Shown here: positions 459 through 49,066 of the stretch, in pieces
Layout of the letters: the number at the start of each line of letters is the position of its first letter
How positions within the stretch are numbered: the first letter of the stretch is position 1
Source of the DNA: Ruditapes philippinarum
Taxonomy: Eukaryota
Assembly (NCBI RefSeq): GCF_026571515.1
Contig: NW_026854547.1
Span: 1-64,000, forward strand
Direction: 5' to 3'
DNA: 64,000 nucleotides
The notes under the pieces: generated by a model
Database searches by the model: none
Told to the model about the DNA's origin: nothing
The model's input: the letters and a program-made list of their open reading frames with translations, nothing else
Made by a program: the position numbers and the translations under genes

Positions 459-1670
459 GTAAACATGATTACCGCCTGAACATTGCAAAGAAAGCAGGAG
501 CAAATTTCGCACTGAATGTGTCATCGGTCAAGGACCCAAAAGAAGTTGCAAAGATGGTTATAGATGCATTGGGTGGCAAAGCTGACATGTCTATAGATAG
601 CACTGGATTCCAGAGCAGTATCCAGGCTGCTATCTATGTAAGTTTAAAAGAAAATGTGCATAGGTACTTTTGTCAAAATAACTTTCAGGCTGTTAATTCA
701 TTATTTTATAAATACCTGGTATTTATACATATATCATAAATAATAAAAAAGCAACATTTCCCAATAAACATACGATTGTCTGTCTGTCAGATAAATCAGG
801 AGTAGTGTCTTGAATTTACACATATAGCGCATTAAGTTTGTACTAAATTCTAAGCATACTGGTACTAAACCTACTACAGTATTCAAAATGTGCTCGCAAG
901 CCTTATATTCTATTTCTTAGTTAGAGTAGAAAAACAGATTTAATACTACTCAGTTATTTAACAATCCTGTCTTCTTGAACTATCAACTATAGATATAGTT
1001 TCTTTTTCTAGGCAACCGGCAATGGCGGCAACGTTACAATCAGTGGACTGAGAGAAAATGTTGTTACATTACCAATAATAAACGCTGGCTTAAGAGAAGT
1101 TGATATCCGTGGAGTGTCCGTGAATGCACATTGTTACCCAATAGCACGTGAAATGATAGCCTCAGGTAGACAATACATTTGTATATTCTTTTTCCAATTG
1201 CAAAGCATTAAAATATGAGCTTTTTTCTCTGTTTGCATTTACTATGTGATTTATACATTTATAAACATGCATAAATTCAACTTACTAGTATGTGATAATG
1301 ACATATTCATCAACAATAAACATGCTGTGTTCAAGGACTCACCTTCAACGATTTGCAGCGAAGCCTTTGTTATAGCCTTTGTTATAGCTACATGTTATAC
1401 GACATTTTAACAAGTCACCTTTCTTGTCCTGAAGTTTATTATATAATATATATCAATGAATGTTTTGATTCAAATATTTGAACAGAGGAGGGGATGGGTA
1501 TATATTCTTATATTATATTTGGTTATTTGTAAAAAAAAAACGTTTGCTTGTTGCAGGTCGGTCAGTGAAAATCTTTGGTTAACCCGGGTTTTCCTTTGGG
1601 AAAGGGTTTAACGAGGCTTTTTAAGATGGCGAGGCAAAAAATGCATGAAATTAGTCGTTTGTAATAAAAT
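459..1670 (+). CDS. SORD-like zinc MDR dehydrogenase, copy 1 (partial; last three exons only, terminal exon frameshifted as assembled)
   Basis: Exons 459-637 (xKHDYRLNIAKKAGANFAL...IDSTGFQSSIQAAIY) and 1012-1165 (ATGNGGNVTISGLRENVVTLPIINAGLREVDIRGVSVNAHCYPIAREMIASG) have AG/GT boundaries and the same phases as exons 7-8 of copies 2-4. The last exon starts at 1557 after ttgcag and resembles VKxLVTHRFPLEKVNEAF but has several indels. End coordinate is approximate. Confidence 0.85.
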
Positions 1671-3339
1671 TAGACTTTGATAACAAAAAATTGGGTTTTC
1701 TTTTAGTTAAAATATTATGTAAAAGCGGAACTGTTATTTTATTGTAACTTTTTAAATTACATTAAGAAATTTTATGAATTTTTTTTTAATAAGTAAAACC
1801 TGTTAGAAAAACGAAAATTTTGATTTAGAGGTTCTCAAAAAAAATTAATCTACTTTAAACCTTTAGTGAGTATCTTTTTTTAAAAGATACCTCTTGTATT
1901 TGTTTATGTCATTGTCGTTTCTTATGTACCGTATGTTGCAACTGTCATGAAAATTATTATTTTAGAATGTATGAAATAATTTTATCATGCTATACTGAAT
2001 TGGTTAAGATGTGATTTAATTTTAATCCTTTCACTTTTTCTTTTTTTTTATATATCCTCCTTTCTTTTTTTTTGTTATGTTTTGTAGATCTATATATTTT
2101 GGATAAATATGTAATAAACATAAAAATAAAAATAAACATAAAAATGAAATGTACTTATGGTAAAATATTAAATATTTTGGCCTTATGTTTATCGTTACTT
2201 GTTCTTTATACGGGTTGCCAAAATAACTATATATTTGAACATTTTTTATTCATTTGCACGTTTGAGTATTTAAATCAAATTAAATTTTGAAATAAACAAT
2301 TGTGGTTAAACTACTAGTATTTGAGTTCATGTTCCTTTGGCGTTCCATAGATTTATGTATTTTTGTGTTAGTTGTTACCTGTAAAACGACTGAAGGTTAC
2401 ATATGAGGATGTGGTTTTTGTTCAGATTTATAGGACGTGACGGATATCATCAGTGTATACGACTATCATAATTATAACACATGAAATATACTTATGTTTC
2501 TTAAACCTTAAACATACCTTTAACTGAGATATAGTCAGCGTGTACATTTGATTAGCCACAAAACAAATCAAGTTTTCTTCTTTTTTTAGAAAGGGCAAAC
2601 GTCTGTTTTATAATTTCTAAATAATTGCTTCAGAGTTAAATGTTTATCATCTAAAGAAAGTAAGGCTGGATTTGGAATTATTTGTCATGAAAGAAGCAAA
2701 ATCTGAACAAAGATGTTTTTTTACTTTTACTTTTACTTCTATACAAAATAAAAATGTCATATAACTGTACTAATTGACAAAAAGCATCAGAGACAAAAGA
2801 CAGTTCAGGAAATTGGCCAAAAAAGTACATGTAACTGAAACAGGACACCAAGAAAAAGAAATTTGAGTAATAAAAACCACAACATTTATTGAGCATAACT
2901 GGCCTTTAAGACGGATTACATGTATATCATTTACCATATTGCGTCTATTCAATGCGTTTTTTTATCATAAGAATATTATTATAGAATCCTTACCACACTT
3001 TCATGTTGATTCAGTAACAGTGTCGTGCTTTTGTTAAAAAAAGAAATATCAGAAAGTCTTAATTACGCGAAATTAACCATAAACAAATGCAAAAAGGAAA
3101 TAACACGAAACATAAATCCAACTAATTAGAATTCATCATAAGCAGCGTGTACATTCCATACTTGTACTTGCATTGAAAACCAGTCACAATTTACATTTAC
3201 CCCGTTAAATTTGTTAAATCTATTTAGAAAATGAAATTTAGAAAAAGCGAGATCCTTCAAGGGCAATGAAGACAAAACTAAACATGTGAAAATAAGAGAC
3301 TTGTTTTGTGTGTCGCGTAATTCTGTTCATGGGCCTTAA

Positions 3340-4084: not shown

Positions 4085-4816
4085 TTAAATTAGTGAACCT
4101 TTCTATATGCCTGTAGACCGTAGAATGTTTAAGGTAAGCGAAAAGAAGACTATTATTTACTAATTATTTCCTACAATTTCTAACAATCGCCTAAACATAT
4201 TTGTGTGTGAATCTAAACTCACCAAAATGCAACTATGATACGATACTCCAAAGCAAAAGGCATCCCCCTAGTTTTCCTTCCTCAGACTGCACCTTTATTA
4301 TAACCGAGCTAGCTCTTGTGGAAGACATTTTCACGGTCTTGCTTTTGATATGGAACTATATCAAAACATTACAATAAAGCAGTCAGGAACAAAGACTATA
4401 ATTATTATACTGGGATATTTGTAAAGTTTGTTCTTGAACACACAAGTTTTGGGTTGATGAACACATTTTTTACATCGTTAGACCGAGTACATAATACAGA
4501 CATAATTGTAAAGTATTGTGAAATACAGTTAACAAATATCATAATTGAATCACCATCACATATTCGCCACGGATTGACGACGTTACACGTCAAATACTCA
4601 AGGTCAATTTTACATTTTTTCTTCTTCAAAATAAATGCAAGTTAACACCATTTCTGTTAAACCCTATAAACTTTTCGTACTTAAACGGTAGTTTAACTTT
4701 TTATTACGTTTATACTTGGCGGAGCTTTAGAGCGCGCAACATTAGTAAAACTTACTTCGTGTTGTTCTGGTGTAACACAATTAGATTTTTTTATGTTTTA
4801 TCAATTCTAAAATATA

Positions 4817-7800
4817 ATGACTGAGGCAAATTTAACAGCTGTATTTCATGGAATAGAAGATGTCCGCTTGGTAAGTTGGTTTGATTTAGACAAAAGCAAT
4901 TTATTTCTAAAAATATCTAGTTTAGAATTTTTTGCATACAACAACGTACAGACTATAATTTCTTTCAATGTGAACTTACCAACAATAGAGGGTAAATGCA
5001 TCATTTTTCGTGCATGTCATCTGCATGGGCGCATTTAAAGCCCGAGCCCACAGGGCAAATGATAAAATGAGGCCGATGGTTTCTGCAGATGAATGCTCGA
5101 AAAAGATGCATTTGCACTATTCTTGCATAAAAGGAAATGTATGCTTCGGTAATGTCGCGTTTCGTTGTCTAATTTCCTAAAAGAAATCGGCTTCGTCGTG
5201 CTTTTTATGTGCTAGTGCGATGTTATTTAACAGTAATGGTTTGATAATGAAATTACTGGGTCCGTCTTTTCAAGAAGCTATTTTACGTGGCGCCAAAACT
5301 TATATTAAAATGTACAGCAACGGCGCAGACACGCGTAATGTTATCTGGCAATGCATGTTTTATTCCCTGTGAACGAAGTTTTTATACAAAAATAATGGAC
5401 AATACCAACCCTTAATCTTTGTTGGGTGTATAATTATTGTTATAATTTCAAGTAGATCTTCGGAGCGAACAAAGTACATCTTATGGACATTTAACATAGA
5501 TAGCGAGCTTTATCTCCATATCAAGCTTTCAATTATTATGTTAGATTTTGTTATTTATTTAAAAAAAAAACACAAAAAAAACAAAGAAACAAACAAACTA
5601 AAAAACGAGAAACTATTTAAACAAGACATACATAATTAAGTTTAAAACTTTTAGCCTAGATTTTTCGACCGCATTATGATTGTACTTCTCAAACCAAAAC
5701 GTTGACCTCAGTTAACCAGAGATTTACATATATATCATTCTTGCCCCGAGGATATTTGATATGTTGTATTTTTTTTTTACCTCAAATTTTTGTATTTGTT
5801 ACATGGACAGTTAAGTTAGTCCTTGAATGTATAAAGGCTATATCTTACAAAAGTAAATACAAATATCATCATGAACAGAACAGAACAGAACAGAGTTTAT
5901 TTCATAACTTGTACACACATAGGTACATCGTTATTACAAACATTTTTAAATATAATTATAGGTCACATATTTTACAATTACACATAAAGAAAAAACAAAT
6001 CAATACAATACTGAGCAATGGGATATTTAATACATACAATGTGATACATTACATACACTGACAAAACTCCATTTATCAATTATATATCCATTTTTTTAAA
6101 TTACTTCTGTAAATGAATAATGAAGAGTACTAAATTTAAGCGGAGAACAAACTATAACTTCGCTTTTAATCGAATTTGTTTGATAAATTATTTATATAAT
6201 AATATACTGAAAAAACATCAAGGTATATATAATCAAAACTGCATCATAATACTATTGAAGATTTCTGAAGTAATCATTTCGTTTGATGTTTGCCTTTTTT
6301 AAATAATAACATAAGTTTGTAAGTACTTTATGACTTTTAGATTGTAGTAGTTCTATAAATTTGGCCATACTAGGCCTAATGTAAAAATATCGCTTAATGT
6401 ATTGACTACGTAGATTTTCATAAGCACTGCATTTTAAAACAAAATGATATTCGTCTTCGAGTTCGTTAGTATCACAGAATTGACAAGTTCTTTCGTGGCG
6501 TTCTACACGGCCTCGACCATACCTTCCGGACTCAATTCTAAGTCTGTGAGAGGACACTCGAAGGCGTGTAAGAGCGCTTCTAAAAGATTTACAATTAATC
6601 TTATCTAAATATAATTCATAACAGAACTGATCTTTTACATATGAATATAGATGACTGAGCACACCATTACTAGATACATCTGCACGCCATTCTTGTAAAT
6701 AACAATCGATAAGTCTTTGTTTAAAAACAGGTAAGAACTGTTTTAACAATACACTATCGGGAAATTCCATATTTCGGCAAAACCAAGTACCGCAAGCAGT
6801 TTTTTAATTTTACATGGCCAGTTATTTGTGCCATTTTCACATTTGTCACTGGCATTTTCGTAAATGCATTTTAATATAATGTTATCCGTATTCAGTAATT
6901 TAAACCAATACTTTATTATATGTGTGTACCTAATGATAAATAACGGATACCTCCCTAATTCCCCGTAGACCGATACGTTACTTGTACTTAATTTAACGCC
7001 CAAAATCGTTTTACAGTATTTGAGATGTACACGTTCTAACTCTTTGGACTTAGTGAAGCCCCAAACCGGGCAGGCATAGTTTAAGATAGATCCCACAAAA
7101 GCATCAAACAATTGAAGCGATATCGAAGGGCTAAGTTCATATTGTTTTATATTATTTAGCAGTATATTTGAGGCTTTTAAGGCCTTTCCGACTATGTACT
7201 GGTTATTTAATACGAATGAGCCGGTATAATTAAACACCACCCCTAGGTAGTTGAAGTCATTAACTATTTCTAGAGGCACATTATTGAAATGCCAGCGCTC
7301 ATTACATTTTAGCCCACCCCTACGACGAAACACCACTATCTTGGTCTTAGATGTGTTGACTTGTAGGCCCCAGTACTGGCAGTACTCGTATAATTTGTCT
7401 AAACTGGCCTGCAAATCTTCAACAGAATGGCCAATAATTGCCATATCATCGGCGAATAGCAGTATGATAAGGCACATATCATAAATAGATAAACCTGATT
7501 TAATGGATCCTTGCAGGAAAAGTTCCAAGTCTTCAAGAAAAAGGGCAAACATGACTGGCGAATTATTTAGGCCTTGCCTCAATCCAATGGAAATATTGAA
7601 AAAGTCAGAATAGGAATCAGAATGTTTAACACAAGACTTAACTATATTATACATAGACCTAAACATTTTTAAAAGTTTTCCATCCAACCCAAGATGATAC
7701 AATTTAAACCACAGTGCCTGTCGATAAACGGAGTCAAAAGCCTTTTGTAGATCTACAAATGCACATGGCAAACGTGACCCTTGCGAAATAACATGTTCTA

Positions 7801-10800
7801 TGAGGTTATGTAATGCAAATATAGCATCTACAGTGCTGTGACCCTTTCTGAAACCGAACTGGGCGTCAGATAGAATATTATAACTTTCGAACCATTTCTC
7901 AACCCTAGCTGTTAACACACCAGTGAATAATTTTCCAAGGTTACTCAAAAGTGTAATGCCCCTATAGTTGTTAGGGTCATTTTTACTTCCCTTTTTGTGG
8001 ATCGGTATTATATAATCTTGTGCCCATATATCTGGGAAATAACCTGAATTAAAAACAATATTAAAAAGATCTGTTAGATGGCCTCCAATGATATCAATCG
8101 ATTCGATTAAGTATTCATTTAAAATATTGTCACTGGGACATGGCGATTTGTTTCGGCCGAGTCGCTTGACTGCAGCGGTTACCTCCCCTAGTGTGATAGG
8201 TAAGTTAAGCTCACCGTATGTAGGATCATGTAAATTTAAATCATTATTATCGTTAAAATTTTCAACCTCATTTATAACAGTTGTCGGAATATTATTAAAC
8301 AAATCTGAAAAATAATTTTTAAAATGCTCTACTGTTATATCATTTTGACATGACTGATTATTAGATTTAAAATATTTCCAAAACTCACGCGGTTTACTTT
8401 TTCTTAACTCCGAAAGCTTCCTACCTTCTTTCAATTTGTAAGCGCGTTTTTTCTTGCGCACTATATATTTATACGTTTTGCGCTGTTTGCAAAGTTCAAT
8501 TCTATTTATTTCGGACTGGTTACTGTTTTAATTGTGCAACGCGCGTTTATAAAGTATCTTATGGTCTACACATTCCTTATCATACCATATATTTAGATTT
8601 GCTTGGGAGGGTACTTTATTTTTATATTCACGTTTGAACAGAGGCGACGCAACTTCCGAAATGATGTTTGTAAACATATCCACTGTGTAATCTATTCTAT
8701 TTAAATCACTACAATCCGCACTTACAATAAGGATTATTGAAATCGGGTAATTTAGCTATAAGGCCGCGCCGAAAGATTTCTTTGTGTTCCGTGTTCCATT
8801 TGTAAACTGTGTGAACGCGAGATTCGTTGTTATTAACAATATCCTCCGTTAATGGTTTAATCGCTCGCATACTTAATCTCAAGGCAGCATGATCACTAAA
8901 TATATTAAAGGGGCAAATTTCGAACATACTAAGCGTATCAAAATCGGGCTCTTTTAGAAGTAAATAATCAATTACACTATGCGCGCCTCGGCTATAATAG
9001 GTAAAACCACAATAATTATCTAACTGGCCTAATCTCCCGTTAGCTACCCGCAAACCGGTTGCCTTACACAATTCAAGCATTTTGTGACCGCGTGTATTGG
9101 ACAAATTATCAAGCGAGGCCCTAACAAGGTGATTATCGGAAACATAAAAGTCCGGATCATAATTTCTAATATTTTTGTCACAAACAATATAGTCAGGTTT
9201 GTTACCAATACGACAGTTCCAATCACCTGCTACATATACTCGACCCGATTGTTCAAAATTAAAGACATCTTGTTCTATGACATCAAAAAGGTTAACGTCT
9301 ATAACATTTGCAGCAGGAGATTCATCCGGCCATAAATATAAACAACAAAAATAAACATCCTTATCAAAATTGAAAAAATCACAATCAAATTTAAGCCAGA
9401 CAATAGTGTCAAAATTATTCTTAACTATAGATACACCTTGATTGAGGCATTCACGTACGTAAATTGACATTCCACCACTATTACGTCTTGCCCTTTTATG
9501 TTTGAACTTTCGATATAAATTATAGCAACGATAGCCTTCTATAGACACATTTGAATTTTTATCGGTCCATGTTTCACTTAAAACAATATTATCATTATCA
9601 GTTAAAATGGAAAGAAAATCTTTATCAGAACGTTTTGTGTCAGTTAAACCATTTAAATTCCATACTAGAATACTAAGTTCATCCTCCAATAAATCCTATT
9701 CGTACTTGACTGGGGTTCCGTCTATGTAAAGGGTGTCGTAAACAAACCAGGCTTTCTTCTTATCCTTTATAGCAGCTTTCAACTTCGGTAACAGTTTACG
9801 GCGTCTAGCGACAATTTCAGGAGGGAATTGCTCGTGCAAAAAATAATCCGTGTGATCTAAAAGTTTGTTTTGTCATCTAACTATTTCACGGTCTGAGAAA
9901 TAAGCGAATCTGCAGACAACTTTGCGAGGCTCCGTTGTATTACCCTTAACTTGGCCTAATCTATGTACTCGCTCTATTTTCATAGAATCAACAATACTCT
10001 GTGCCACTTTTAAATTATCCACAAAGAATTTGCGCATAACGCTATCAAGATTTTCATCTTCCTCTTCCTTGAATCCCCCGAATCATGTCTATACAACTGA
10101 CGTTTATAGTCGAGAACGAAACAAGCGGAAACAAACACGGCCCATTGTGTTATTCGTTCTTACAAATGCCGTACATGAGTATAATAACGGCTTATACATC
10201 GTTAAGAATTGAAGACAAGGACTTTGACTCTATCAATTGAGCAAATTCAACAATATTTCGCACCTTCTTTTTATCATAAAGACAGTCTTAATTTGAAAGA
10301 AATGGGTAAATTTTAGGTTTAAAAACATGTTGTATGCTTTCAAAGAAATCTTTATTAGATAGTAGGTGTTTTAGTGAAATGCTGTCAGCTTTTAATAATT
10401 CCAAGCGATAGATAAAGAAAGAAGACAGGATATGACTAGGAAGAGTTTCTGGTTACAGTTAATGGGGGAATAAAATCTTACATTTGCATATTCACATTCA
10501 CATGGTTCTGTTCAGATAAGTAGTCTGGTCTTTTAAAGCTTTATCCTGAGGAAAATGTGCTATAAACAGTCCGCATGAATGCTTTTTAACAGTTAATTTT
10601 AGGAAGACACTGTTTCTACAAATAATGTTGCAGAAGTCAAAGATATTTTGAAAATTGAAGCAGTAAAGATTTTTTTAAATTACTAATTGCTCATGACATT
10701 TAACACTTTCTTCATATATCTGTTTTAAAAGATTAACTGAACTTCAGTTTTAATCTTACCCTAAAGACAAAACCTTTGGTTTTGCATTATTCTTCTTTGT

Positions 10801-13800
10801 AAACATAAACATATATATATGAAATAGCTATATTATATTTTTCATATGTGAAAATATACTTTTATTTTACTTTTTCAGCAAGTCGAAAAAATACCAGAAC
10901 CAGGCCCTGGAGGTTGGTATTTCTATTTGAACAAATCTGTCAATACGGAATCGAAAAACGTACCATTTGGATCAAAAGTCTGAAACCATTATCATTGTAT
11001 TTAGTTGATAGTTGCTCTTATTTACTCAAATAACTCATATATTTCATTCTACGGCATCTGACCATTTTTGGTCTATTTTAAAAGTTTTGATTAGAATTTT
11101 GATTTGATTTCATTCTTGTTAAATATGGCTGCGTTATATACATCAAATTGAAAGACATTGATTTCTTGAACCTGTAGAGATCATTTAAATATTCTTGCAG
11201 AGGTACAAATCCGTGTAGAAAATGTTGGAATATGTGGTTCGGATCTTAGTTTCTGGAATCATAACGGAATTCCGGAATGTATTGAAAGTAAGGATCCCTA
11301 TGGTTTAGGACATGAGGGCGCAGGCATTGTGTCAAAGCTAGGTGAAGGTGTCACTTCTCTAAAGATCGGTAAACTGAACCCTATTTATTTAGCTTTACTA
11401 TCATTATAAGCATATTTATTCACTTATACTTTAAATGAATTTATTTAAAAACTTTTTATATCTTCTTAGGCATCAGGCAAGGAAAGAAACTTTATTTTAC
11501 ATCATTCTTGTACAAAATCGGTGGTAATGTAACCACTAAGCAATAACCATCCGCTTTTAGATTTTTTGTTATTTTCAGTATACATGTACCTTCTGTACAG
11601 CAAAATGAAAATACTAACTATACAAATAATTGAAATTTATAGGTGACAAAGTTGCCATGGATCCATTTTCCTATTGTGAAACGTGCTCTGATTGTAGAGA
11701 AGGAAAGTTCAATTTATGTGAGAAGGCAGCGATACATGGTTTTCCTGGACATTGGGGTTACATGGCACGATATTGTGTTGAGAATGTTAAGCACTGTTTC
11801 CGGTAAGTGACACTTTCAAGAGAATAGATGTCTTTATTACAAAGTGCATGCTACATTTTCTAATGCATAACTGCCTATGAGTGTCATTGAGAATACGTTG
11901 AAGTAACGCAATTAATTTTATCAACTTAAACCTAATATTTTCCAGGTTGCCAGACCACATTAGTACAGAGGAAGGCGCTATGCTCGAACCTCTTGCTGTC
12001 GCCCTGCATGGATGCCGCCGTGTTGGAGTGTCTGCTGGAAACAATGTTCTCATTACTGGAGCAGGTACAGTTATAATTTATACTATAATAATTAACGATG
12101 TTTAAATTAAGTGAATTGATGAGATGAGTAAACAAAACTTTGGATTGTTTGGGTGCTTTGAAGGAGGGGGGAGGAACTTTTTAAAAAAGTGCGTGCCAAG
12201 TTTGTACCCTTTATTGGTTCATGTATAAAACAATTATGTAAAGGGATAAAAGGCTTGACTGTTAGACTATTTGTTAAGTTATGAGAGGAAATATTAGTAC
12301 CAAATTAATATTTTGTTATAGTTGTTTTGGGTTAATGAATTTTATATAAATATATAAATTATAATATAATAACTTAGTAAAATGATATTTGATTTATAGG
12401 ACCCATGGGTTTACTGTCAATGATGGCTGCCAGGGTGTTTGGAGCTACAAACATTTGTGTTACAGGTTATCTTATCAATTTTTTATTTATACAGTGTATT
12501 ATATAAAATTCTACATGACGTTTCTGCTGAAGAACATGTTTATATGGAAATTTCTAAAAATGATATTTGTCATTATTACGAAATTTCTATAAATATAATG
12601 GAATTTAAGAAAAAATTCGAGATGTGGAAAATAAACATAATTTGACACAAAGATTCACAACCTAAACGCCTATGATATCACACGCGGTATCTTTTTTTAT
12701 TCCTGTTGTGGTAATGGTTTAACTTGCAAGTTATTTCATGTTTTCATGGTTTGATTAGATTGTAAATTTTTGTTTGACAGATGTGCTTGAATCTCGTATT
12801 AAACTGGCAAAGCAGTTAGGGGCTGATTATGCACTAGACGTGAGATCAAAAGAACCAGAGGAAATTGAAAAAATGGTAGAGGAGTGTTTTGGTGAGAAAC
12901 CACACGTTGCTATAGAATGTAGTGGTTCACCAAGTGCTATAAGGGCAGCCATACGAGTGAGTTGTTGTGTTTGTTTCACTTGCAGCCCTTTAGTACAGCA
13001 ATCTTTTATAAACATCACTTTTTTCAAATGGCAAAGGATAATGTTTTGTAAATTAAATATGCAATAAGTAAGTTGTTTTTTTATGAAAAGAAGAAACAAT
13101 CGGATGAATAAGTTGCTCAATGTCTTGACCATTTTATATCGTTCAACGTTTTAAGATGTTCACCCAGTCCTTCGGTATATCAAATTATATTATTTGCATG
13201 CCTCTTTGAATTAGTCTGCCATATCGACCAACAATTATCGTTTCTGAATAAACTCAAGGAATGAAGAAATATAAGGTTATGTCTCTGCAATGTTTGTTAA
13301 AAGGGGTGTTTCCTATTAAATTTTAGTCTACAAAGAGTGGTGGTCGTGTGGCACAGGTTGGGCTCGGAGAAGCAAATGTTACTGTACCAATTATTAACGC
13401 ATCATTTAGGGAAGTGGATATATTAGGTGTTCGGGCATACCTATATTGCACACCACTGGCAATTGACCTTGTATCATCTGGTAAGTCATATCTTACAGCA
13501 TTTATACTCATTCATAATTCAAAAATAAAAATGTATAAAAAAAATATAAAAAATCACCTTATATATTATGCAGTTATACGGTGATACTTATGAAGTCCCC
13601 ACTTTTGTTTTTAAATTATATCGGACAGTGATATTACAAGTCATATAACTTTTATGGAAACGGCATACAAAATAAAATGTCAAGTTCTAGATATATTTGA
13701 AATTTTATATCGTTTTCTAAGTGAAGAGATAAGAGAAATGCATTATTTACTAGAATTTATATGATACTGTCTTTGGAATTAACACCAGAATGAATACAAT

Positions 13801-14243
13801 GCTGATCCAAATCTACAAATTGTACACTTAGTACTTTAATAAGTATACATCGAAGTCATCTGCTCTGAAACTAACAAAAAATGTGTGTTTGTTAGGAATA
13901 ATGACATGTCTTCGTCATTTACACAGGGCCAAAAACAACAAACACGCACATCAGGTTTTCTCATCTTATTTGAATAGTAGCCAGTTTCATCTCAGACTCT
14001 ACAATAACTGTAACTAAAAAAGGGAATTGAGAATGTCAACTCAAAAATATGAAAAATAGATATTATCTAGATATAGGTCCATCGAATTACCTTACTTTAA
14101 TTGATTTACTTTCAATTCCAGGTCAAATGGACATTAAACCTCTTGTCACGCATAGATTTGATTTGGAAAATGTCACTGAAGCTTTCGAAAAGGCACAGTC
14201 ACGTGATTGCGGAAAGGTCATGATCAGATGTAGCAAGAATTAA
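4817..14243 (+). CDS. SORD-like zinc MDR dehydrogenase, copy 2 (9 exons, 350 aa)
   Basis: Exons 4817-4870, 10879-10912, 11201-11368, 11643-11802, 11946-12064, 12400-12465, 12781-12956, 13327-13480 and 14122-14243 are all GT-AG and join in frame to 1053 nt. Motifs: GICGSD, GHE, CxxCxxCx7[27 protein letters not shown]. Confidence 0.95.
4977..5428. mobile_element. Probable MITE in SORD-like copy 2 intron 1
   Basis: Degenerate inverted termini CCAACAATAGAGGG ... CCCTTAATCTTTGTTGG. Confidence 0.35.
5874..10081 (-). mobile_element. 5'-truncated LINE retrotransposon (RTE-X-like): partial ORF1 plus ORF2 with APE endonuclease, RT and CCHC
   Basis: Endonuclease ORF 9689-8709 (WNLNGL, LSETW, AGDWN, IDY, SDH), RT ORF 8461-6743 (QFGFRK, FVDLQKAFDSV, GLRQG, LLFADD, YLG) and C-terminal 6770-6252 (HRLRIESGRY...CQFC...EDEYHFVLKC). 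ORF1 C-terminus at ~10081-9697 (HEQFPPEIVARRRKLLP). 3' end is AATAAA plus (TTCTG)n. Candidate TSD ATCATG at 5868-5873 and 10082-10087. ORF2 has two frameshifts and one stop. Confidence 0.92.
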
Positions 14244-25100: not shown

Positions 25101-27936
25101 TGTTTGCAGATGGATCTGCCCTGTTTTAATATTAAGAATAGGAACAATTAACATTTGTAAGTTATGTTGTCAATTTTACAGTTCCTTAAAGTTCCCATTA
25201 GGGGTGTACTACCTTAGCCCGTTTATGATATAGAAGGTTGAAATAAGTCAGCAGACTGGCTTGACTTGATGCAAAGTCATTCAGGTAGCGCGGATTCAGA
25301 GGCAGGATCCCCCTCAGGGATTTGGCTGGTACATCTATCATTCTGAGATTTGGAAATCAGCTTACGTTTTCTTTGTGACACTCAAGCAAAAGCTAGCACA
25401 AATCACTAAAACAGTTTGACTCATAACCCCTCTAGAAAAGAAATAATTGTCATCCCCTCTGTGAAATATGCTTTCTTTTATTAAAGTTCTGCGACACCCT
25501 CAGGTAACAGGTAAAAAAATTCCTTCATCCACGCCTGAGCACAGTAACGTAACGGGCACCAAACTTGACAACGTTTCATGTATAAATTGCAGATTATATT
25601 TGAAGTGAACGGTCTTATGATAAGATAAATATTATCATCCTTCTCTAGAGCAGAAAATGAATGAATGAATGAATGAATGAATGAATGAATGAATGAATGA
25701 ATGAATGAATGAATGAATGAATGAATGAATGATGTTTTAATCTACAGATTAATTAAATTAGACATTGAATGTTATTTTATTTTCAGGTCCTATAGGACTA
25801 CTGTCCATGAAGGGAGCAAGAGCACTTGGTGCTTCAAACATTTGTGTAACAGGTTTTTTGTTTGTCTACTTTTCATTAAACAAAAATGAAAACATTTAGT
25901 CGATTGTGTGTTCATAAAATATAATACAGATAATATTTTCAGTTAGAAAACAAACTTGTTTGATAGGCTGCTTAATATAGAACGTTGCTCTGTACACAAA
26001 TTGGTAGTACTCGACAAGATATTTAACTTGTCAAAGTTATGATTTAGAATGAACTTTGAGGTATATAAATTTTAAATTTTGTATGTGCTTATGTAAACTC
26101 TTAGTCCCTTATCATGGTGATATCTTGAGAAGTCTTGGAAGTATGTGATAGTGTTTGATAATGTATAGTATTTTATAAGTCGCCAGTAAATCAAATATTT
26201 GATTGGTTTCATATACAATGTACATGTATGTATGTATGCCATTGTTTTATCTTGTACTGTACATTGATTGAATTATACATATTTGTTATTGAGACTCTAA
26301 TACATAAATAAATAAATAAATACTTTTTCTATATATAAGTATGTATCAATTCGTAATTCTTGCTTTACATAACATATGCAGGTGTATGTGATTCAAAGAG
26401 TAATAGTCCTTTATTAATGAATATTGTAACCGCCTCCGTGGTTGAGGGGTTAGAGTCGATGACTTCTAATCTAGTTACCTCTTTGGCGTGTGTTCGATCC
26501 CCGGGAGATGCTTTGGTAGTTTAAGGCGGAGGAAGGTAGTCTAGTTCTGGTGTTACTCTCAAGGACCGCTGGTTAGGAAACTACCCGCCTATATGACTGA
26601 AATACTGTTGGAGAAAGGCGTAAAATGAAACAAACAAACAAACAATGAATATTGTTGTACTCTGTATTTGTGCACTATTTCTCTATTTTATTTGACTAAA
26701 ATTTGTATTATTTTATATGTGTGTACCATTTATCACATTATTACAGATGTTAATGAAACTCGTGTAAAACTGGCAAAGCAATTAGGAGCTGATTACGCAT
26801 TAGACGTTACTTCAAAAGGAGTATTGGAAATTGAAAAAATGGTAGAGGAGTGTTTTGGAGAGAAGCCTCACATGACAATAGAGTGCAGTGGAGCACCGAC
26901 TGCCATTCAATCAGCCATTAGGGTAAATTATCTAATGTGAACTAACTGAACGTTTTTCAGTACACCGACGGTTATGTGCATCTCGAACATTGTATTATGA
27001 CTGATTATTTAATTTAGATATGGAAGTTTATGCAATTAACTTATTCACAAAACTAAAGATGATCTAAATATAAAGGAATAGAAAAACGAGGGACTTTCAT
27101 AATAAAATACACAAAAAATGGTGATGAACCTTAAAATTGACTAAATGACGAGTAAGCATGATTACTATTAGTATTTGCAGTTTCCAGCTCAAAAGTATGG
27201 TTTTTTGATAAGACCTAATCATAATTTGGCTAAAAAAAAGATTTTAAGACAACGTTGATGTACATAGATTATGTGACAATATTTCGATTTTACATGCATG
27301 TCATTTGTTGCATGATGACAATGTGCACAGCGGTTGAATCCATGTGTTATTTGTATCATCTATGTTTTTTGTTTTCTGTTTCCCTTCAAGTCTACAAGAA
27401 ATGGTGGCCGTGTTTCGCAGATCGCACTAGGGGAAGGAAATGTCACAATACCGTTGATTAACGCCTCCTTTAGGGAGGTCGATATTTTAGGGATTAGGTC
27501 AAACCCGTATTGTACCCCATTGGCTCTGGACCTTGTTGCTTCCGGTAAATACACTCTACTTGTAATCTTGAATAGGATAGATTGGATCTTTCTTCAAATA
27601 ATAAAATGCACTGTAGATTTTTTTGAACATGTAATTGTTCATTTAATTGTTCAAAATTAATATATGTGAAATAGTGTCTCCTTTCCCATCTTAAACAGTG
27701 TCGCCCCTTTGAAAAACGTTTTATGCTGTTATGACTAGACAAATAAATATAAATAAACTAATAAAACAGATATGTATTACAAAACAGTATATATTGTTGT
27801 GATATTAATTTCAGGCCAGATTGACGTTAAGCCCCTTGTTACACATAGGTTTGATTTGGAAAATGTTGCTGAAGCTTTTAAAAAGGCAGAGACACGTGAC
27901 TGTGGGAAGGTCATGGTCAGATGTAACAAGGACTAA
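22187..27936 (+). CDS. SORD-like zinc MDR dehydrogenase, copy 3 (9 exons, 350 aa)
   Basis: Exons 22187-22240, 22546-22579, 23227-23394, 24456-24615, 24920-25038, 25787-25852, 26747-26922, 27391-27544 and 27815-27936. Lengths and phases are identical to copy 2 and the frame is open through to TAA. Confidence 0.95.
23003..23191. mobile_element. Small fold-back MITE
   Basis: AGCTTGATATTCTATCA..ATAATCGCTCTAAAGT is inverted against ACTTTAGAGCGATTATTGATAGAATTTCAAGCT. Confidence 0.55.
25656..25732 (+). repeat. (TGAA)n microsatellite, SORD-like copy 3 intron 5
   Basis: About 19 perfect TGAA units. Confidence 0.95.
26428..26643 (+). mobile_element. tRNA-derived SINE (MetaSINE-like)
   Basis: A box, B box GTTCGATCCC, 3' ATATGACTGAAATACTGTTG...GGCGTAAAA, (AAAC)n tail, and a 12-bp TSD AATGAATATTGT at 26416-26427 and 26644-26655. 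Confidence 0.88.
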
Positions 27937-30837: not shown

Positions 30838-30869
<32 letters not shown>

Positions 30870-43770: not shown

Positions 43771-46700
43771 ATGTCTGGAGGAAATTTAAGAGCCGTATTT
43801 TATGGTATACAAGATATTCGTTTGGTAAGTTGTAATTTCCATATCTTTCATATTTTGATAGTAAATGTATTTCTTTTTCTTAACATATATATAGTATCCT
43901 TCTTTTTAACACAAAGATAACACACATATATGTACGTTTAACTTGCAGGTCGTCACTAATATAAGTCAACAAGGACAAACTTTGTCGAACTAACTTAAAC
44001 ATAAACATAGTTTGCATAATATTGTCTAATATTCACTTCAAACAATTTTACATGTAAATACAATATAATCGGGCACATGTGGTCTTCCTCCTCCGGGGAT
44101 AGTTGTAAACTCGCCACATGCAATCACCTCAACAGTGTCTTTGCATTTAAAACCCAACCAAATTAATCTAGATCCGACTAATTTACTATTAGTATTTGCG
44201 TAACAATGTACGTATATATGCTTTCATATTGTTTTAACATGTCACTATTTATTTTTTAACATTTTTACCAGAGAGATGAACAGATACCAGAGCCAGGCCC
44301 AGGACGTTTGTATTTCTTCTTACTTTTTATAAATTATTCAATTATTGAATGTATGTAGCAACATCATATGTCCACAAAAAATCTCAAACTGTGTATGAAT
44401 TTCAATAATATTATATTTCTATGCAAATATGACAAAAACTTTGTATGCAAATATGACAATAACTTATATGCAAATATGATAAAAAAAAACGCTTGTATTA
44501 AAATGATAAATTAAATATACAATTTATGATATCTAATGACAAAAAAGTGAAGTATCTGCTGAGCAACACCTTTTAAAAGAACAAGACTTGCTGAGGGGTG
44601 TTGCTTTAGAGAGGTTTAATTAATTTTGAAATCTGATTTTGGACGAATTGATACGGTCTGTTGTAAAGAGGTTATTTCTTTACAGATGACCACTCAGCAG
44701 AGGTTACATAGCATGACGATGATTAAAAATAGAATGATTAGCTCATGGACCTAAAAAAACAACATTTTACAGCATCGCCATTTCTTGAAAATTGCGAACG
44801 TTTATTTGTTAATCAAAACCGTACTATGGAGGGTTTTTGTCACTGTTTTATTTCTTAAAAACGCTACAATAAAAAATATAACTATATAATATAAATATGC
44901 CAGAGGTAATGGCAAGAAGCGTTATCATTTTAAAAAAATATTGCAGAAATACAAATCCGTGTAGAAAATGTTGGAATATGTGGTTCGGATTTAACTTTCT
45001 GGAACCACAACAGAATTCCGGACTGTGTGGAAGGTAAAGATCCCTTTGGTATAGGACATGAGGGTGCAGGCGTTGTGTCGAAGCTAGGGGAAGGAGTCAC
45101 TTCCCTAAAGATTGGTAATTTACATGTGCATTATTTTTACATGCATTACCTTCATAATTGCACGTAATGATTGTTATATGAAAGTGACATTATGTTCTTT
45201 TTTCATTTTCAAGTTCAACTGCATTGGCTATATACATGTACATGTACTGTTAAAATGGTGACTGGTTAACCGTTGATATCAGAAAATGTTTAGGATAAAA
45301 TATAAATCTACCTAAGTATATAAGAAAGACTGCCCACTCTTTATAAATTGAATGTTACAGGTAAATTTCAATGGATTTCTACAGAAACTTCTGGAACAAG
45401 TGATTTATGTATCGTTCAGCAGTAAATCACTACAGACTTTATGGCCAAATGCAAACTTTCTTTTTAGCTCGACTATACGAAATATATGGAGAGCTGTCCT
45501 GCTCGCCCCGGTCCAGATTTCAGATTTAAGTTTTGGTGCAGTAAAATATTTTCACTATAACATTTTCATTTCTTAAGGTACCAATATTTATAGATTTATC
45601 TGCCCTTGAACTTTAAGAATTTTCTTAAAAAAATTAGTTTTTACTATAACTTTTTCATTTCTTAAGGTATCAACTTCAAACTTCAAATATATGTTCCTTA
45701 TCATCAACCACATCTTATGTGACAAGGTTCATAACTCTCTTGCATCAATATTTTCAGATTTGTCTACCCTTGAACTTAGAATTTTCCTTAACAAATATGA
45801 TCTTTTACTGTTACTTCTTTATTTCTTAAGGGATCAACTTAAAACTTGAAATATAATTATGTTCCTTATCATTAACCACATCTTATATGACAAGGTTCAT
45901 AACTCTAGCACCAATATTGCAAGAATTATCTCCCCATTTACTTAGATTTTTTTTTCTTTAAAAATGTTATTTTTTTTCTATAACTTCTTTAGTTTTAAAG
46001 GTATCTACCTCAAACTTCAAATACCAGATCTTATGTGACAAGGTTCATAACTCTTGAAGCAATATTTTCAGATTTATCTCTCTTTCAGCTTAGAATTTTC
46101 TTTAAGAAAATATTATAAATTCTTTACTTTTAAAGGTATCTTCTTCAAGCTTCAAATATATATTTCTTATCATTACACACATGTTGTGTGACAAGGTCCA
46201 TAACTCTATTTTGACTATTTCCAGAATTATTCCCCCTTGAACTTGGAATTTATGGTAACAACCTTAACTTTTGTCATAAGAAGAAATATATTTATATCAT
46301 AATTGATTTTTCTTTCATAGTTTTGTCTTCTTCCTTACTGCGTGCAGTATTTAATTAGTCGAGCTTTGCTGTCTCCTGTGACAGCTATTGTTCCCCTTGG
46401 ATGGCATAATGTCACTTTAAGTTTATTTATACTCGCCACCGGTTGCACATAAGGGCGAGTCCTCCAGAAGAGAATTAGTCATTTCAAATTTTGTAGGATA
46501 GTGCAAGACACAGATTCAGAAAGATAACCAAATGCCAGAAGCTTCTACTGGTTCTTTTTATTGTGCCAAGTGTTTAAGCACTCATAAACGGAACCACGAT
46601 TTAAAGTCTCATCCGAAAGACTGATTAGTTGGCCAGCCCGGGAATCGAACCCACAATGTCGAGTTTACAAGTCTCGCGCTCTAACCTATTCAGCTAAGTG

Positions 46701-49066
46701 GGCTGGTTATTCGAAGATGTATAATAACATCACAATATATATTAAGGTGACAAGGTTGCAATGGATCCATTGTCAAGCTGTGAAAGGTGCTACGATTGTA
46801 AAACAGGACGGTACAATTTATGTGAGAAACTATCCATATGCGGTTCCCCAGCAAAATGGGGCTACATGACAAGATATTTCGTCGAAGAAGCTAAATGTTG
46901 TTTTAGGTAAGGCGTATAAAAATCTGTAAAAGGAAAATAGAAAAAAACACATTATATATCTGTTGTTCCATTAAAAAGATTGTACATGTATATTGTAATT
47001 TTATATTTAGATAATACATATTTTGTAAATTTCATGTTCGATAAATGTGTCAAATCGAAACATTTTAATAGCATTTGAATTGACTTTACAAACTTATCAT
47101 TTGTTCATTAAAATGTCTTTGATTACTGTTCCAATAATAATTATGTTGTATTTTCTATCTTTGACGTTAAGTGTGTGTCGAATTTAAGACCGTTTAAACA
47201 AATTAATTCCAGTTTATGCAATAGAGATAATTTTTAGGTTACCAGACCACATAAGTACAGAGGAAGGTGCTATGATCGAGCCTCTTGCTGTCGCCCTACA
47301 TGGATGTCGCCGTGCTGGAGTGTCTGCTGGAAGTAACGTCCTCATAACTGGAGCAGGTACAGCATTGTGTCACATAAAAACTTATAACAATAGATCTAAT
47401 TGTTTGCGTTCTTAGTGAGATTGACTTACCCTATTTTGAATTTAGAACATTCCGTCATCAATATGAAGCATAGTACAAGTAAAACTCAAGTTGTTTATCA
47501 GAGGTAGATATAAAGACTGCACAGACTGTCTAGAAGGGCAGACTAGCTTAACTTTAGGGAAACTGTTTTGCAGTTTCAGATCAAGCAAAGTCATGTAATA
47601 GGCCCAGCACATTGACAAAGTTTTGATGTAAAAACTGAACGAGCATTGAACAGTTTTATGATATGACAAACATTGATATATTGCAAAGTTACGTTTAGTC
47701 ACATGATATTTGTTGTAACATAGTGAGCGAGCGAGTGAGTGAGTGAGTGAGGCTACAAATAATTTAATGTCATTTCATTTTCAGGTCCTATAGGACTACT
47801 GTCAATGAAGGGCGCCAGGGCGCTTGGTGCCTCAAACATTTGTGTAACAGGTTTGTATTTGTCTTCTCACATGTTTACTTTCTATGAATAGAAACGAATA
47901 TCAAGAGCAATATATAATAAACTATAAGGATATTGTCTAAGGCGTCTTACAAACTTATATAGACAGTCAGTTAATTCAGATTTCCTTGTGAAAAAAGATT
48001 AAAAAGATTTATGTTTTGTAATGTTCGTGCTACTTGACCAATATATCTATATATCCGCCTGTAAATAGTTGAAATGTTAAAGTTCTTTATTCATTAAAAC
48101 GATTCTGATACTTTAGCTATATCTGGTTTGGTTATCTTTGTATATAATTTCGTGTACGACTTCATCACTTTAATTATTGCAGATGTTAATGAAACTCGTG
48201 TAAAACTGGCAAAGCAGTTAGGAGCTGATTATGCTCTAGACGTGACATCAAAAGGAGCATTGGAAATTGAAAAAATGGTAGAGGAGTGTTTTGGAGAGAA
48301 GCCTCACATGACAATAGAGTGCAGTGGAGCACCGACTGCCATTCAAGCAGCCATAAGGGTAAATAATTTAATGTGAATTAGGTTCTGTCTAATGTGTGTC
48401 TTGTGTCACTCTTCAAACTCGTAACTGATTGTTTAATATGAAATGTCACGCAACGAAGTTATTTATATGACTGAAAATGACCTAAAAACAACTTATAAGT
48501 TAGAGATTTCGATATATATTGCAAATTAAATATAGAAAAGGTTAATGTGATATGTATAACATCTGTGATTTAGGTTTTCTGTTTTCTTCAAGTCTACAAG
48601 AAATGGTGGCCGTGTTTCGCAGATCGCACTAGGGGAAGGAAATGTCACAATACCGATGATTAACGCCTCCTTTAGGGAGGTCGATATCTTAGGGATTAGG
48701 TCAAACCTGTATTGTACCCCATTGGCACTGGACCTTGTTGCTTCCGGTAAATACCCTTTACTTGTAATTTTTGTAAGTGTATATTCATTCGTTCAAAATA
48801 TAGATTAGTTTATATTCAAGCTCTGACAATTTCTTATAATGTTCCTGTATATTCACTTAACCAATGTCGCACACGTCCTTTTGGTGAAACGTTTTGTATT
48901 AAAGTAGCCTGGCATATATTTATTAATTGTGATTATATTTTCAGGTCAGATAGACGTTAAACCTCTTGTTACACATAGATTTGATTTGGAAGATGTCGCA
49001 GAAGCTTTTAAAAAGGCAAACACACGTGATTGTGGGAAGGTCATGGTCAGATGTAACATGGACTAA
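43771..49066 (+). CDS. SORD-like zinc MDR dehydrogenase, copy 4 (9 exons, 350 aa)
   Basis: Exons 43771-43824, 44272-44305, 44947-45114, 46747-46906, 47238-47356, 47785-47850, 48183-48358, 48593-48746 and 48945-49066. Same lengths and phases as copies 2-3, with an open frame. Confidence 0.95.
45461..46392 (+). mobile_element. Helentron-associated (HINE-like) element
   Basis: Subterminal inverted repeats AGCTCGACT / AGTCGAGCT, internal ~150-170-bp repeats containing GACAAGGTTCATAACTCT, 3' hairpin GCTGTC-tcctgt-GACAGC and T-rich ends. Confidence 0.8.
46420..46708 (-). mobile_element. tRNA-derived SINE with V-domain-like core
   Basis: Minus strand TAGCTGAATAGGTTAGAGC...GGTTCGATTCCC, then GTCTTTCGGATGAGACTTTAAATCGTGGTTCC, which is V-SINE-like. 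Confidence 0.8.

What the first reader, a model, noticed from the sequence alone, without database searches (positions are those of the whole stretch)
459..49066. Tandem SORD-derived enzyme cluster with a rebuilt substrate pocket: probably not sorbitol dehydrogenases
Seen: copies 2-4 keep the catalytic zinc ligands (CGSD, GHE, EPL) and a four-Cys structural zinc site, but the polyol pocket differs from canonical SORD as recalled from the human sequence. SDVHYW becomes SDLSFW or SDLTFW (His lost, Tyr to Phe). GRIGNF becomes NGIPEC, NGIPDC or NRIPDC. FFCATPPDDG becomes [20 protein letters not shown] or SICGSPAKWG. The GVFRY motif becomes GVRAY (copy 2), GIRSN (copies 3, 4) and GVSVN (copy 1). 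Established: these positions line the SORD substrate site, and plant L-idonate dehydrogenase arose from SDH by pocket changes. Inference: this is a lineage-specific family of neofunctionalised carbohydrate oxidoreductases. Arg in place of the pocket Phe hints at an anionic (sugar-acid, phosphorylated or sulfated) substrate. Differing pockets could mean successive steps of one clustered pathway.
Basis: partly seen in the sequence, partly recalled or inferred. Interest (0 to 1): 0.78.

Follow-up and report, generated by a model that had tools for sequence, protein, structure and literature searches.

The report
Clam sorbitol-dehydrogenase offshoots with rebuilt pocket
A Manila clam gene cluster holds intact, transcribed copies of a sorbitol-dehydrogenase-like enzyme that keep the catalytic core but have lost about half of the usual sugar-binding residues, so they probably act on something other than sorbitol, though nobody has tested this.

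Summary
The window is from Ruditapes philippinarum. It carries three complete nine-exon genes, copies 2-4, which match RefSeq XP_060584312.1, XP_060584316.1 and XP_060584317.1 exactly. All are named "sorbitol dehydrogenase-like". It also carries the 3' end of a fourth gene, copy 1.

Zinc ligands C44, H69, E70 and E155 and the four-Cys site are kept. Nine of 19 published active-site positions differ from 34 other SORD-family proteins. R298, Y299, T121, A120, F59 and G57 are invariant in those 34.

The genes are functional rather than decaying:
- dN/dS is 0.15-0.19.
- Copy 3 shows spliced transcripts.
- Published primers for a heat-induced clam "SORD" match copy 2 exactly.
- Mercenaria has an orthologue with the same pocket.

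In the tree they form a clam clade, seen in two venerid genera, nested inside canonical heterodont SORDs. It is sister to a second derived clade (copy 1, P0153) in which the NAD-selecting Asp203 is Gly-Lys-His, so that clade is probably NADP(H)-dependent. A canonical FRY-type SORD exists elsewhere in the genome.

Changed specificity is well supported, but the substrate is unknown. I call this a new variant of a known kind.

The parts
459..1675 (+). Copy 1, 3' fragment only. Exon 7 is 459-637, exon 8 is 1012-1165, and the damaged exon 9 lies at about 1556-1675. It is a P0153/P0002-type paralogue.
   Evidence: tblastn with P0002, P0153 and P0159. AG and GT flank exons 7 and 8. Exon 9 has several frameshifting indels relative to the intact copy on contig C9832. 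The window's first 2.5 kb are only 85% identical to C9832 with 146 gaps, so either a pseudogene or an error-rich contig end is possible.
459..472 (+). Copy 1 coenzyme-site codons, (G)KHDY. Gly-Lys-His stands where canonical SORD has Asp203 and the two residues after it.
   Evidence: In the alignment P0002-type proteins have G 4/4, K 4/4, H 4/4, against D 34/34 in the other family members. Whitefly NADP(H) ketose reductase 1e3j has A-R-S at the same place.
1111..1125 (+). Copy 1 GVSVN, opposite human G295-Y299 (GVFRY).
4817..14243 (+). Copy 2 gene, which equals XP_060584312.1 (P0308, 350 aa). Exons: 4817-4870, 10879-10912, 11201-11368, 11643-11802, 11946-12064, 12400-12465, 12781-12956, 13327-13480, 14122-14240, then stop TAA.
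   Evidence: Exact spliced mapping with all introns GT-AG. Accession. Published qPCR primers for heat-induced clam 'SORD' match at 13352-13370 (+) and 14137-14155 (-) with 0 mismatches.
22187..27936 (+). Copy 3 gene, which equals XP_060584316.1 (P0303, 350 aa). Exons: 22187-22240, 22546-22579, 23227-23394, 24456-24615, 24920-25038, 25787-25852, 26747-26922, 27391-27544, 27815-27933, then stop TAA.
   Evidence: Exact spliced mapping. Transcript contigs of two runs carry GT..AG joints for introns 3 to 8, and one 1051-nt contig spans exons 3-9. Raw RNA reads of X23 show three of these joints.
43771..49066 (+). Copy 4 gene, which equals XP_060584317.1 (P0270, 350 aa). Isoform X2, XP_060584318.1 (P0305), skips exon 3. 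Exons: 43771-43824, 44272-44305, 44947-45114, 46747-46906, 47238-47356, 47785-47850, 48183-48358, 48593-48746, 48945-49063, then stop TAA.
   Evidence: Exact spliced mapping. A 350-aa protein from a 2030-nt Logan contig (P0306) is 98% identical. AlphaFold2 model has pLDDT 94.3.
11233..11280 (+). Copy 2 catalytic Cys plus pocket segment 1 ([16 protein letters not shown]), human positions 44-59.
23259..23306 (+). Copy 3 catalytic Cys plus pocket segment 1 ([16 protein letters not shown]).
44979..45026 (+). Copy 4 catalytic Cys plus pocket segment 1 (CGSDLTFWNHNRIPDC).
11729..11758 (+). Copy 2 pocket segment 2 (AIHGFPGHWG), human positions 117-126.
24542..24571 (+). Copy 3 pocket segment 2 ([10 protein letters not shown]).
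46833..46862 (+). Copy 4 pocket segment 2 (SICGSPAKWG).
13426..13440 (+). Copy 2 pocket segment 3 (GVRAY), human positions 295-299.
27490..27504 (+). Copy 3 pocket segment 3 (GIRSN).
48692..48706 (+). Copy 4 pocket segment 3 (GIRSN).

Best explanation
Copies 2-4 are functional, transcribed, zinc-dependent medium-chain dehydrogenases. They arose from the canonical sorbitol dehydrogenase gene by duplication in the lineage leading to venerid clams, evolved fast on the stem, and have been held by purifying selection since.

The chemistry is most likely unchanged: NAD(H)-linked interconversion of a secondary alcohol and a ketone at the catalytic zinc. C44, H69, E70, E155, S46, D47 and the NAD-selecting Asp203 are all kept. 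The part of the pocket that in SORD holds the far end of the hexitol is rebuilt (Y50F, G57P, F59C/V, F118I, A120G, T121F/S, F297R, R298S/A, Y299N/Y). So the preferred substrate is probably not sorbitol or xylitol, and copy 2, copy 3 and copy 4 may differ from one another (position 121 F/F/S, 298 A/S/S, 299 Y/N/N).

Copy 1 belongs to the sister clade (P0153 type). There Asp203 and the next two residues are Gly-Lys-His, so those enzymes are predicted to use NADP(H), as the whitefly ketose reductase does.

Shown: gene structure, identity with the RefSeq models, conservation and replacement of the named residues, phylogeny, purifying selection, transcription and splicing of copy 3, and the primer match of copy 2 to a heat-induced transcript.

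Inferred: altered substrate specificity, coenzyme preference, and any physiological role.
For: - Gene models. P0308, P0303 and P0270 map exactly onto the window with nine exons each and 24/24 GT-AG introns.
- Family. ADH_N plus ADH_zinc_N. Best solved relatives are sheep and human SDH and the whitefly ketose reductase, E 9e-98 to 2e-91. The AF2 model has pLDDT 94.3 and superposes on 3qe3, 1pl6 and 1e3j at TM 0.94-0.96, rmsd 1.5-1.7 A.
- Pocket. Of the 19 active-site positions listed for SDH/LIDH in PMC4404067 (passages read), 10 are kept and 9 changed in 5/5 copy-2-4-type proteins. The 34 other family members in the same alignment have G57, F59, A120, T121, R298, Y299 and D203 in 34/34.
- Selection. 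Pairwise dN/dS is 0.152, 0.188 and 0.149, with dS 0.76, 0.70 and 0.29.
- Conservation across genera. Mercenaria XP_053372630.1 (P0272) has the same pocket: F50, P57, I118, G120, F121, R297, S298, N299.
- Tree of 43 proteins. The derived clades are nested in heterodont SORDs at 97/96*, 100/99* and 100/100*, with stem lengths 0.59 and 0.41 against a median end branch of 0.17.
- A canonical FRY-type SORD is kept at C8176:1554-7734 and C13930.
- Expression. Spliced contigs and junction reads for copy 3. The qPCR primers of PMC12997834 hit copy 2 exactly, and that paper reports log2FC 2.59 (RNA-seq) and 2.26 (qPCR) at 33 C in gill.
- Coenzyme. P0153 aligns G-K-H to A-R-S of the NADP(H) ketose reductase 1e3j. 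PMC4404067 states that Asp rather than Ala at human 203 underlies NAD over NADP choice.
Against: - No enzymology exists for any member, so changed specificity is inferred from residues only. Polyol dehydrogenases are promiscuous, and S46, D47, I56, E155 and L274 are kept, so residual sorbitol or xylitol activity is quite possible.
- dN/dS in the pocket segments is below 1 (0.21-0.36). The only sign of faster pocket change is copy 3 against copy 4, 0.36 against 0.12, Fisher p = 0.028 on small counts.
- The AF2 model is less confident exactly in two pocket loops: residues 51-60 have pLDDT 76 and residues 291-300 have 87. I had no coordinates for docking.
- RNA depth on copy 3 is low in the two raw-read runs. 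Runs X1 and X3 are only guessed to be RNA.
- The predicted spliced amplicon for the published primers is 163 bp, while the paper lists 121 bp. The forward primer also matches the near-identical copy on C9832.
- The taxonomic range is known only from the 120 best rows of two database searches.
Confidence: 0.6

Rival explanations
1. They are still ordinary sorbitol/xylitol dehydrogenases. The pocket drifted without changing the physiological substrate, and the copies were kept for dosage or for differently regulated (for example stress-induced) expression.
For: - The catalytic core and the NAD site are intact.
- Copy 2 appears to be the 'SORD' induced by heat in gill, which fits regulatory subfunctionalisation.
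- RefSeq names them sorbitol dehydrogenase-like.
Against: - Six positions invariant in 34/34 other family members, including R298 and Y299, are replaced in 5/5 members. The replacements are themselves conserved between Ruditapes and Mercenaria.
- The stem branch is long, 0.59 changes per site.
- In plants, changes at three of the same positions accompany the shift to L-idonate and a higher Km for sorbitol (PMC4404067).
Confidence: 0.22
2. They are duplicates under relaxed constraint on the way to becoming pseudogenes. The odd pocket would then be decay.
For: - Copy 1 in this window is truncated and has a frameshifted last exon.
- Its fuller version on C9832 has Tyr at the otherwise invariant D47.
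- A degenerate partial copy lies at C3926:40216-41198.
- RefSeq predicts an exon-3-skipping isoform of copy 4.
Against: - For copies 2-4 the reading frames are open and all splice sites intact.
- dN/dS is 0.15-0.19 at dS up to 0.76.
- The pocket is conserved in Mercenaria.
- Copy 3 gives spliced transcripts.
Confidence: 0.05
3. They have a non-catalytic role, such as a structural or binding protein recruited from an enzyme.
For: Nothing specific here. It is merely not excluded, because no activity has been measured.
Against: All zinc ligands, the proton-relay Ser, E155 and the whole NAD-binding motif including Asp203 remain invariant or conservatively kept (D/E) in 5/5 members. That would be unexpected without catalysis.
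Confidence: 0.03

Closest known systems
Animal sorbitol dehydrogenase (SORD, EC 1.1.1.14; structures 1pl6/1pl8 human, 3qe3 sheep)
   Same: - Fold (TM 0.95-0.96) and domain architecture.
- Catalytic Zn ligands C44, H69, E70 plus E155, and the NAD-selecting Asp203.
- 43% identity to the structures, about 50% to molluscan SORDs.
- Phylogenetically nested inside bivalve SORDs.
   Different: - Nine of 19 active-site positions are replaced, including the invariant G57, F59, A120, T121, R298 and Y299.
- One extra residue after position 61.
- A four-Cys structural zinc site is present. The human enzyme lacks it, but other invertebrate SORDs have it.
Whitefly NADP(H)-dependent ketose reductase (1e3j)
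   Same: - A SORD-family enzyme with a four-Cys site, and the best or near-best solved relative.
- Copy 1 and the P0153 type share with it the loss of Asp203 and a basic residue next to it (G-K-H against A-R-S).
- The link of the whitefly enzyme to heat is my recollection and comes from no call. Copy 2 appears heat-induced.
   Different: - Copies 2-4 keep Asp203.
- The whitefly enzyme keeps the canonical pocket motifs opposite the clam changes: sdvhyy, tfcatppddg, vfryc.
Plant class II SDH / L-idonate 5-dehydrogenase (Vitis LIDH, Q1PSI9)
   Same: - A SORD duplicate whose specificity shift is attributed to changes at human-numbered positions 50, 120 and 121 (Y42H, A112G, T113S in LIDH numbering; PMC4404067).
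- The clam clade is changed at the same three positions. It has A120G in 5/5, and copy 4 (with the near-identical P0306) has Ser121.
   Different: - Position 50 is Phe, not His. Position 121 is Phe in copies 2 and 3.
- LIDH keeps F-R-Y (291F, 292R, 293Y) whereas the clam genes do not.
- The origin is independent. Nothing here points to L-idonate in particular.

Membership tests
Medium-chain dehydrogenase/reductase, polyol dehydrogenase (SORD) family | ADH_N (GroES-like) plus ADH_zinc_N Rossmann domain | tested here: met
   Pfam PF08240 at 90-92 bits and PF00107 at 86-90 bits, both above cut-off, in P0270, P0308 and P0303.
Medium-chain dehydrogenase/reductase, polyol dehydrogenase (SORD) family | Catalytic zinc ligands C44, H69, E70 and E155 (human numbering) | tested here: met
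   5/5 copy-2-4-type proteins, with alignment to 1pl6.
Medium-chain dehydrogenase/reductase, polyol dehydrogenase (SORD) family | Fold like the solved SDH structures | tested here: met
   AF2 model pLDDT 94.3. Foldseek gives 3qe3 E 1.9e-47 TM 0.95, 1pl6 TM 0.96, 1e3j TM 0.94.
Medium-chain dehydrogenase/reductase, polyol dehydrogenase (SORD) family | Descent from within the animal SORD clade | tested here: met
   In the IQ-TREE tree of 43 proteins the clade is nested among heterodont bivalve SORDs, 99/99* and 97/96*.
Sorbitol dehydrogenase in the strict sense (EC 1.1.1.14) | Canonical substrate-pocket residues Y50, G57, F59, F118, A120, T121, F297, R298, Y299 | tested here: not met
   All nine are replaced in copies 3 and 4. 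Copy 2 keeps only Y299.
Sorbitol dehydrogenase in the strict sense (EC 1.1.1.14) | NAD-selecting Asp203 | tested here: met
   D in copies 2-4 and E in Mercenaria P0272. Not met in copy 1 and the P0153 type, where it is Gly.
Sorbitol dehydrogenase in the strict sense (EC 1.1.1.14) | Sorbitol to fructose activity | not testable with these tools
   Needs recombinant enzyme.
NADP(H)-dependent ketose reductase (whitefly type) | Asp203 replaced by a small residue, with a basic residue following | tested here: met
   Met for copy 1 (GKH at 459-472) and for P0153, P0002, P0151 and P0152, 4/4, against A-R-S in 1e3j. Copies 2-4 do not meet it.
Plant L-idonate 5-dehydrogenase (class II SDH) | His50, Gly120, Ser121 (LIDH 42H, 112G, 113S) with F-R-Y kept | tested here: not met
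   Gly120 is present, Ser121 only in copy 4 (and P0306), position 50 is Phe, and F-R-Y is not kept.
L-threonine 3-dehydrogenase and other bacterial MDR equivalogs (NCBIfam) | Score above the curated cut-off | tested here: not met
   Best is TIGR00692 at 227 bits against a cut-off of 458. None of the 10 families listed reaches its cut-off.

The most novel reading that the evidence does not exclude
The clam cluster is a lineage-specific two-enzyme module. It would pair an NADP(H)-type reductase (the P0153 and copy 1 clade) with NAD-type dehydrogenases (copies 2-4) that have diversified pockets. Together they would make or interconvert a polyol or sugar acid other than sorbitol. The module would be switched on by heat and would serve as a stress protectant or redox-balancing shunt, a clam counterpart to whitefly sorbitol synthesis or to fungal alternating NADPH/NAD pentose routes.
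Probability: 0.15. Interest if true: 0.7.

Novelty: new variant of a known kind. Interest (0 to 1): 0.5.

Why it matters
These genes are annotated, and already used in a clam stress study, as "SORD". If their substrate is not sorbitol, pathway interpretations of clam heat-stress transcriptomes that rest on that name are wrong.

The cluster is also a clean animal example of enzyme diversification after tandem duplication. The catalytic core is frozen. The distal pocket is rebuilt at the same positions that changed in plant L-idonate dehydrogenase. A sister clade has apparently switched coenzyme. It offers well-defined proteins for finding a new polyol or ketose activity in molluscs.

Tried and rejected
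- The representative-library search with exon 4 of copy 3 gave 217 hits, none above 51% identity. It did not return the window's own proteins, but it did yield P0002 as a bridge.
- A region-restricted search with the C-terminus of P0002 returned only the query, so that search was wasted.
- An alignment of P0153 with separate exon rows (A2) was scrambled by MAFFT and I discarded it. A3 was clean, but its profile ranked canonical SORDs above the window's copies in a local test. A4 passed the local test and I used it.
- NCBIfam gave no family above cut-off, so I rejected reassignment to threonine, idonate, galactitol-1-P or scyllo-inosose dehydrogenases.
- I rejected positive selection among the three recent copies, because every dN/dS is below 1.
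- A literature search for the human pocket residues by name found nothing relevant.
- Four searches for this clam family found only the heat-stress paper. I therefore saw nothing in that library describing the expansion or the pocket. The supplements of PMC12997834 could identify gene evm.TU.xfSc0000147.20 more exactly, and those of PMC4404067 hold the docking figures.
- I could not run a branch-site test on the stem, because no coding DNA of Mercenaria or other venerids was at hand.

Full report
WHAT IS THERE. The window is AT-rich animal DNA, GC about 0.30-0.36. A self-comparison of stop-free frames showed nine exon families on the + strand. Each is repeated three times, and two of them a fourth time at the window's start.

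I searched the exons one at a time, and I never typed or searched a joined spliced model. Exon 4 of copy 3 matched the whitefly ketose reductase 1e3j, L-arabinitol 4-dehydrogenase and human SDH. Exon 3 and exon 8 matched the same SDH structures. A scan of 1.84 billion representatives with exon 4 gave 217 hits, none above 51% identity. The best full-length hit was P0002, a Mercenaria mercenaria "sorbitol dehydrogenase-like" protein.

A profile made of four P0002-type proteins, with the exon translations of copies 2-4 as separate rows (A4), then returned the annotated proteins themselves. The cluster look-up names them XP_060584312.1, XP_060584316.1 and XP_060584317.1, plus isoform XP_060584318.1, of Ruditapes philippinarum, on a contig of 89,267 bp. 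All three 350-aa proteins map exactly onto the window. Each has nine exons of 54, 34, 168, 160, 119, 66, 176, 154 and 119 nt, GT-AG at every intron, and stop TAA.

Copy 1 is only the last three exons, because the contig begins inside the gene. Exons 7 and 8 are intact. Exon 9 carries several frameshifting indels compared with the intact version on contig C9832. That part of the window is only 85% identical to C9832, with 146 gaps. I therefore cannot tell a pseudogene from an error-rich contig end.

I took the 19 active-site positions listed for SDH/LIDH models built on human SDH (PMC4404067, passages read) and converted them to human numbers with the printed alignments. I then tabulated them in a 44-protein alignment (A7; table).
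- The five copy-2-4-type proteins (copies 2, 3, 4, the Logan protein P0306 and Mercenaria P0272) keep C44, S46, D47, I56, H69, E70, E155, P156, V159 and L274.
- They are changed at Y50F, G57P, F59C/V, F118I, A120G, T121F/S, F297R, R298S/A and Y299N. Copy 2 keeps Y299.
- The 34 other family members in that alignment have G57, F59, A120, T121, R298, Y299 and D203 in 34 of 34, F118 in 33, F297 in 32 and Y50 in 31.

The four structural-zinc cysteines are present in all 44.

FAMILY CONTEXT. Searching the whole genome with P0002 gave 71 exon matches on ten contigs. I fetched these and read them with a canonical query.
- A canonical SORD with the sdvhyw, fcatpp and gifry motifs lies at C8176:1554-7734, with its 5' half on C13930. 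Directly downstream is an intermediate paralogue of the Mercenaria P0158 type.
- Two further FRY-type paralogues lie on C3334 (also C11901) and C11173.
- A divergent paralogue lies on C1454 (also C7628).
- C9832, read on its minus strand, carries P0153, a full copy 1 and a near-copy of copy 2. It is collinear with window 403-14876 at 81-94% identity and lacks the LINE. So it is an alternative haplotype or a recent duplicate, and the cluster order is P0153, copy 1, copy 2, copy 3, copy 4.
- C3926 holds another copy-3-like gene, collinear with window 20403-30049 at 79-87%, and a degenerate fragment.

PHYLOGENY. I chose 43 of the roughly 300 proteins held and built a tree with IQ-TREE (LG+C20). 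The result is (P0158 type, (P0002 type: P0002, P0151, P0152, P0153), (Mercenaria P0272, (copy 2, (copy 3, (copy 4, P0306))))). Supports are 97/96*, 100/99* and 100/100*. The whole group is nested among canonical heterodont SORDs (Mactra, Mya and unnamed transcripts, 99/99*).

The stems of the two derived clades are 0.41 and 0.59 changes per site, against a median end branch of 0.17. Both derived types occur in Ruditapes and in Mercenaria, so they predate that split. Copies 2, 3 and 4 multiplied afterwards in the Ruditapes line. In the 120 best rows, only three clusters are of the copy-2-4 type and four of the P0002 type, all from these two genera. Wider distribution is untested.

ARE THEY ALIVE? 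Nei-Gojobori dN/dS is 0.152 for copy 2 against 3, 0.188 for 2 against 4 and 0.149 for 3 against 4, at dS 0.76, 0.70 and 0.29. The pocket segments run somewhat higher than the rest. For copy 3 against 4 the values are 0.36 and 0.12, Fisher p = 0.028 on 11/7 against 23/51 differences. They never exceed 1.

Reads laid on 22100-28000 show contigs in two probable RNA runs with GT..AG joints at all six introns between exons 3 and 9, including a 1051-nt contig spanning exons 3-9. Raw RNA reads of run X23 support three of the joints, with 1, 3 and 2 reads. Depth in the raw runs is low.

The qPCR primers for "SORD" in a Manila clam heat-stress study match copy 2 with no mismatch, at 13352-13370 (+) and 14137-14155 (-). 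The study is PMC12997834, of which I read passages only. It reports up-regulation in gill at 33 C. Two caveats apply. The forward primer also matches the C9832 copy. The spliced amplicon I compute is 163 bp, whereas the paper lists 121 bp.

STRUCTURE. An AlphaFold2 model of P0270 with the 44-row alignment has pLDDT 94.3 and pTM 0.93, dipping to 76 at residues 51-60 and 87 at 291-300. Foldseek finds sheep and human SDH and the whitefly enzyme at TM 0.94-0.96, rmsd 1.5-1.7 A. I had no coordinates, so I did no docking or electrostatics.

COENZYME. Copies 2-4 keep Asp203 (Glu in Mercenaria). Copy 1 and all four P0002-type proteins have Gly-Lys-His there. This aligns with Ala-Arg-Ser of the NADP(H)-dependent whitefly ketose reductase. 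PMC4404067 states that Asp rather than Ala at this site underlies the choice of NAD over NADP. I reached it independently and checked the residues. The coenzyme preference itself remains a prediction.

INTERPRETATION. The most economical reading is a clam-lineage radiation of SORD duplicates that keep the zinc/NAD(P) chemistry but have a rebuilt distal pocket. I give 0.6 to changed substrate preference. The loss of the invariant Arg298 and Tyr299, and the fact that the replacements are held between two genera, are the strongest points.

The parallel with plant L-idonate dehydrogenase is real at positions 50, 120 and 121, but it does not identify the substrate. Copies 2, 3 and 4 differ at pocket positions 49, 55, 119, 121, 123-124, 298 and 299. 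They may therefore not be equivalent, but a stepwise pathway is speculation.

NOVELTY. The genes are annotated and named by homology. In four literature searches I found no description of the expansion, the pocket or the coenzyme split. I rate it a new variant of a known kind, of moderate interest.

Noticed in passing
window 5873-10222 (ORFs 6746-8461 and 8712-9689, minus strand): A LINE-type retrotransposon sits in intron 1 of copy 2. It has an RVT_1 reverse transcriptase (118 bits) and an Exo_endo_phos endonuclease (33 bits). It is absent from the collinear contig C9832, so it is an insertion difference between haplotypes or duplicates.
   Followed up: partly
window 30993-31415, minus strand: A single-exon ORF encodes a C1q domain (PF00386, 79 bits). 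It lies between copy 3 and copy 4. C1q genes are a family known to be expanded in bivalves.
   Followed up: partly
window 31575-34368: A minisatellite of about 122 copies of a 23-bp unit, 85% matches. A 144-bp repeat of 3.5 copies lies at 29270-29773.
   Followed up: partly
window 26434-26630 (intron 6 of copy 3): Read and contig depth is enormous here: tens of thousands in contig word depth, and about 380 in raw RNA reads against 0-6 in the exon bins. Many reads have loose ends. It is most likely a highly repeated, transcribed mobile element and not part of the gene.
   Followed up: no
L044, C9832:14617-14784 (minus strand): The fuller version of copy 1 on contig C9832 reads CGTYL where all 44 aligned family members have an invariant Asp (human D47). 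This suggests copy 1 may be catalytically impaired even where its frame is intact.
   Followed up: no
L033/L046, C8176:1554-7734 and 11145-17703: The canonical FRY-type SORD is followed in tandem by an intermediate paralogue of the P0158 type (sdvryw, fsgfppthg, gvmgy). That paralogue already has A120G and has lost R298, so it is a possible first step of the radiation. Exon 5 of the canonical gene looks damaged on C8176 but is intact on C13930.
   Followed up: partly
window 52323-52580 (-), 56816-57067 (+), 58025-58264 (-): Three copies of a related ORF of about 80-85 aa lie in mixed orientation downstream of the cluster. Pfam gave no match for the one I tested. It is probably an unclassified repeat.
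   Followed up: partly
window 43771-49066: RefSeq isoform X2 of copy 4 (XP_060584318.1, 294 aa) skips exon 3. That would delete the catalytic Cys and His. I found no read evidence for or against it, because reads were laid on copy 3 only.
   Followed up: no
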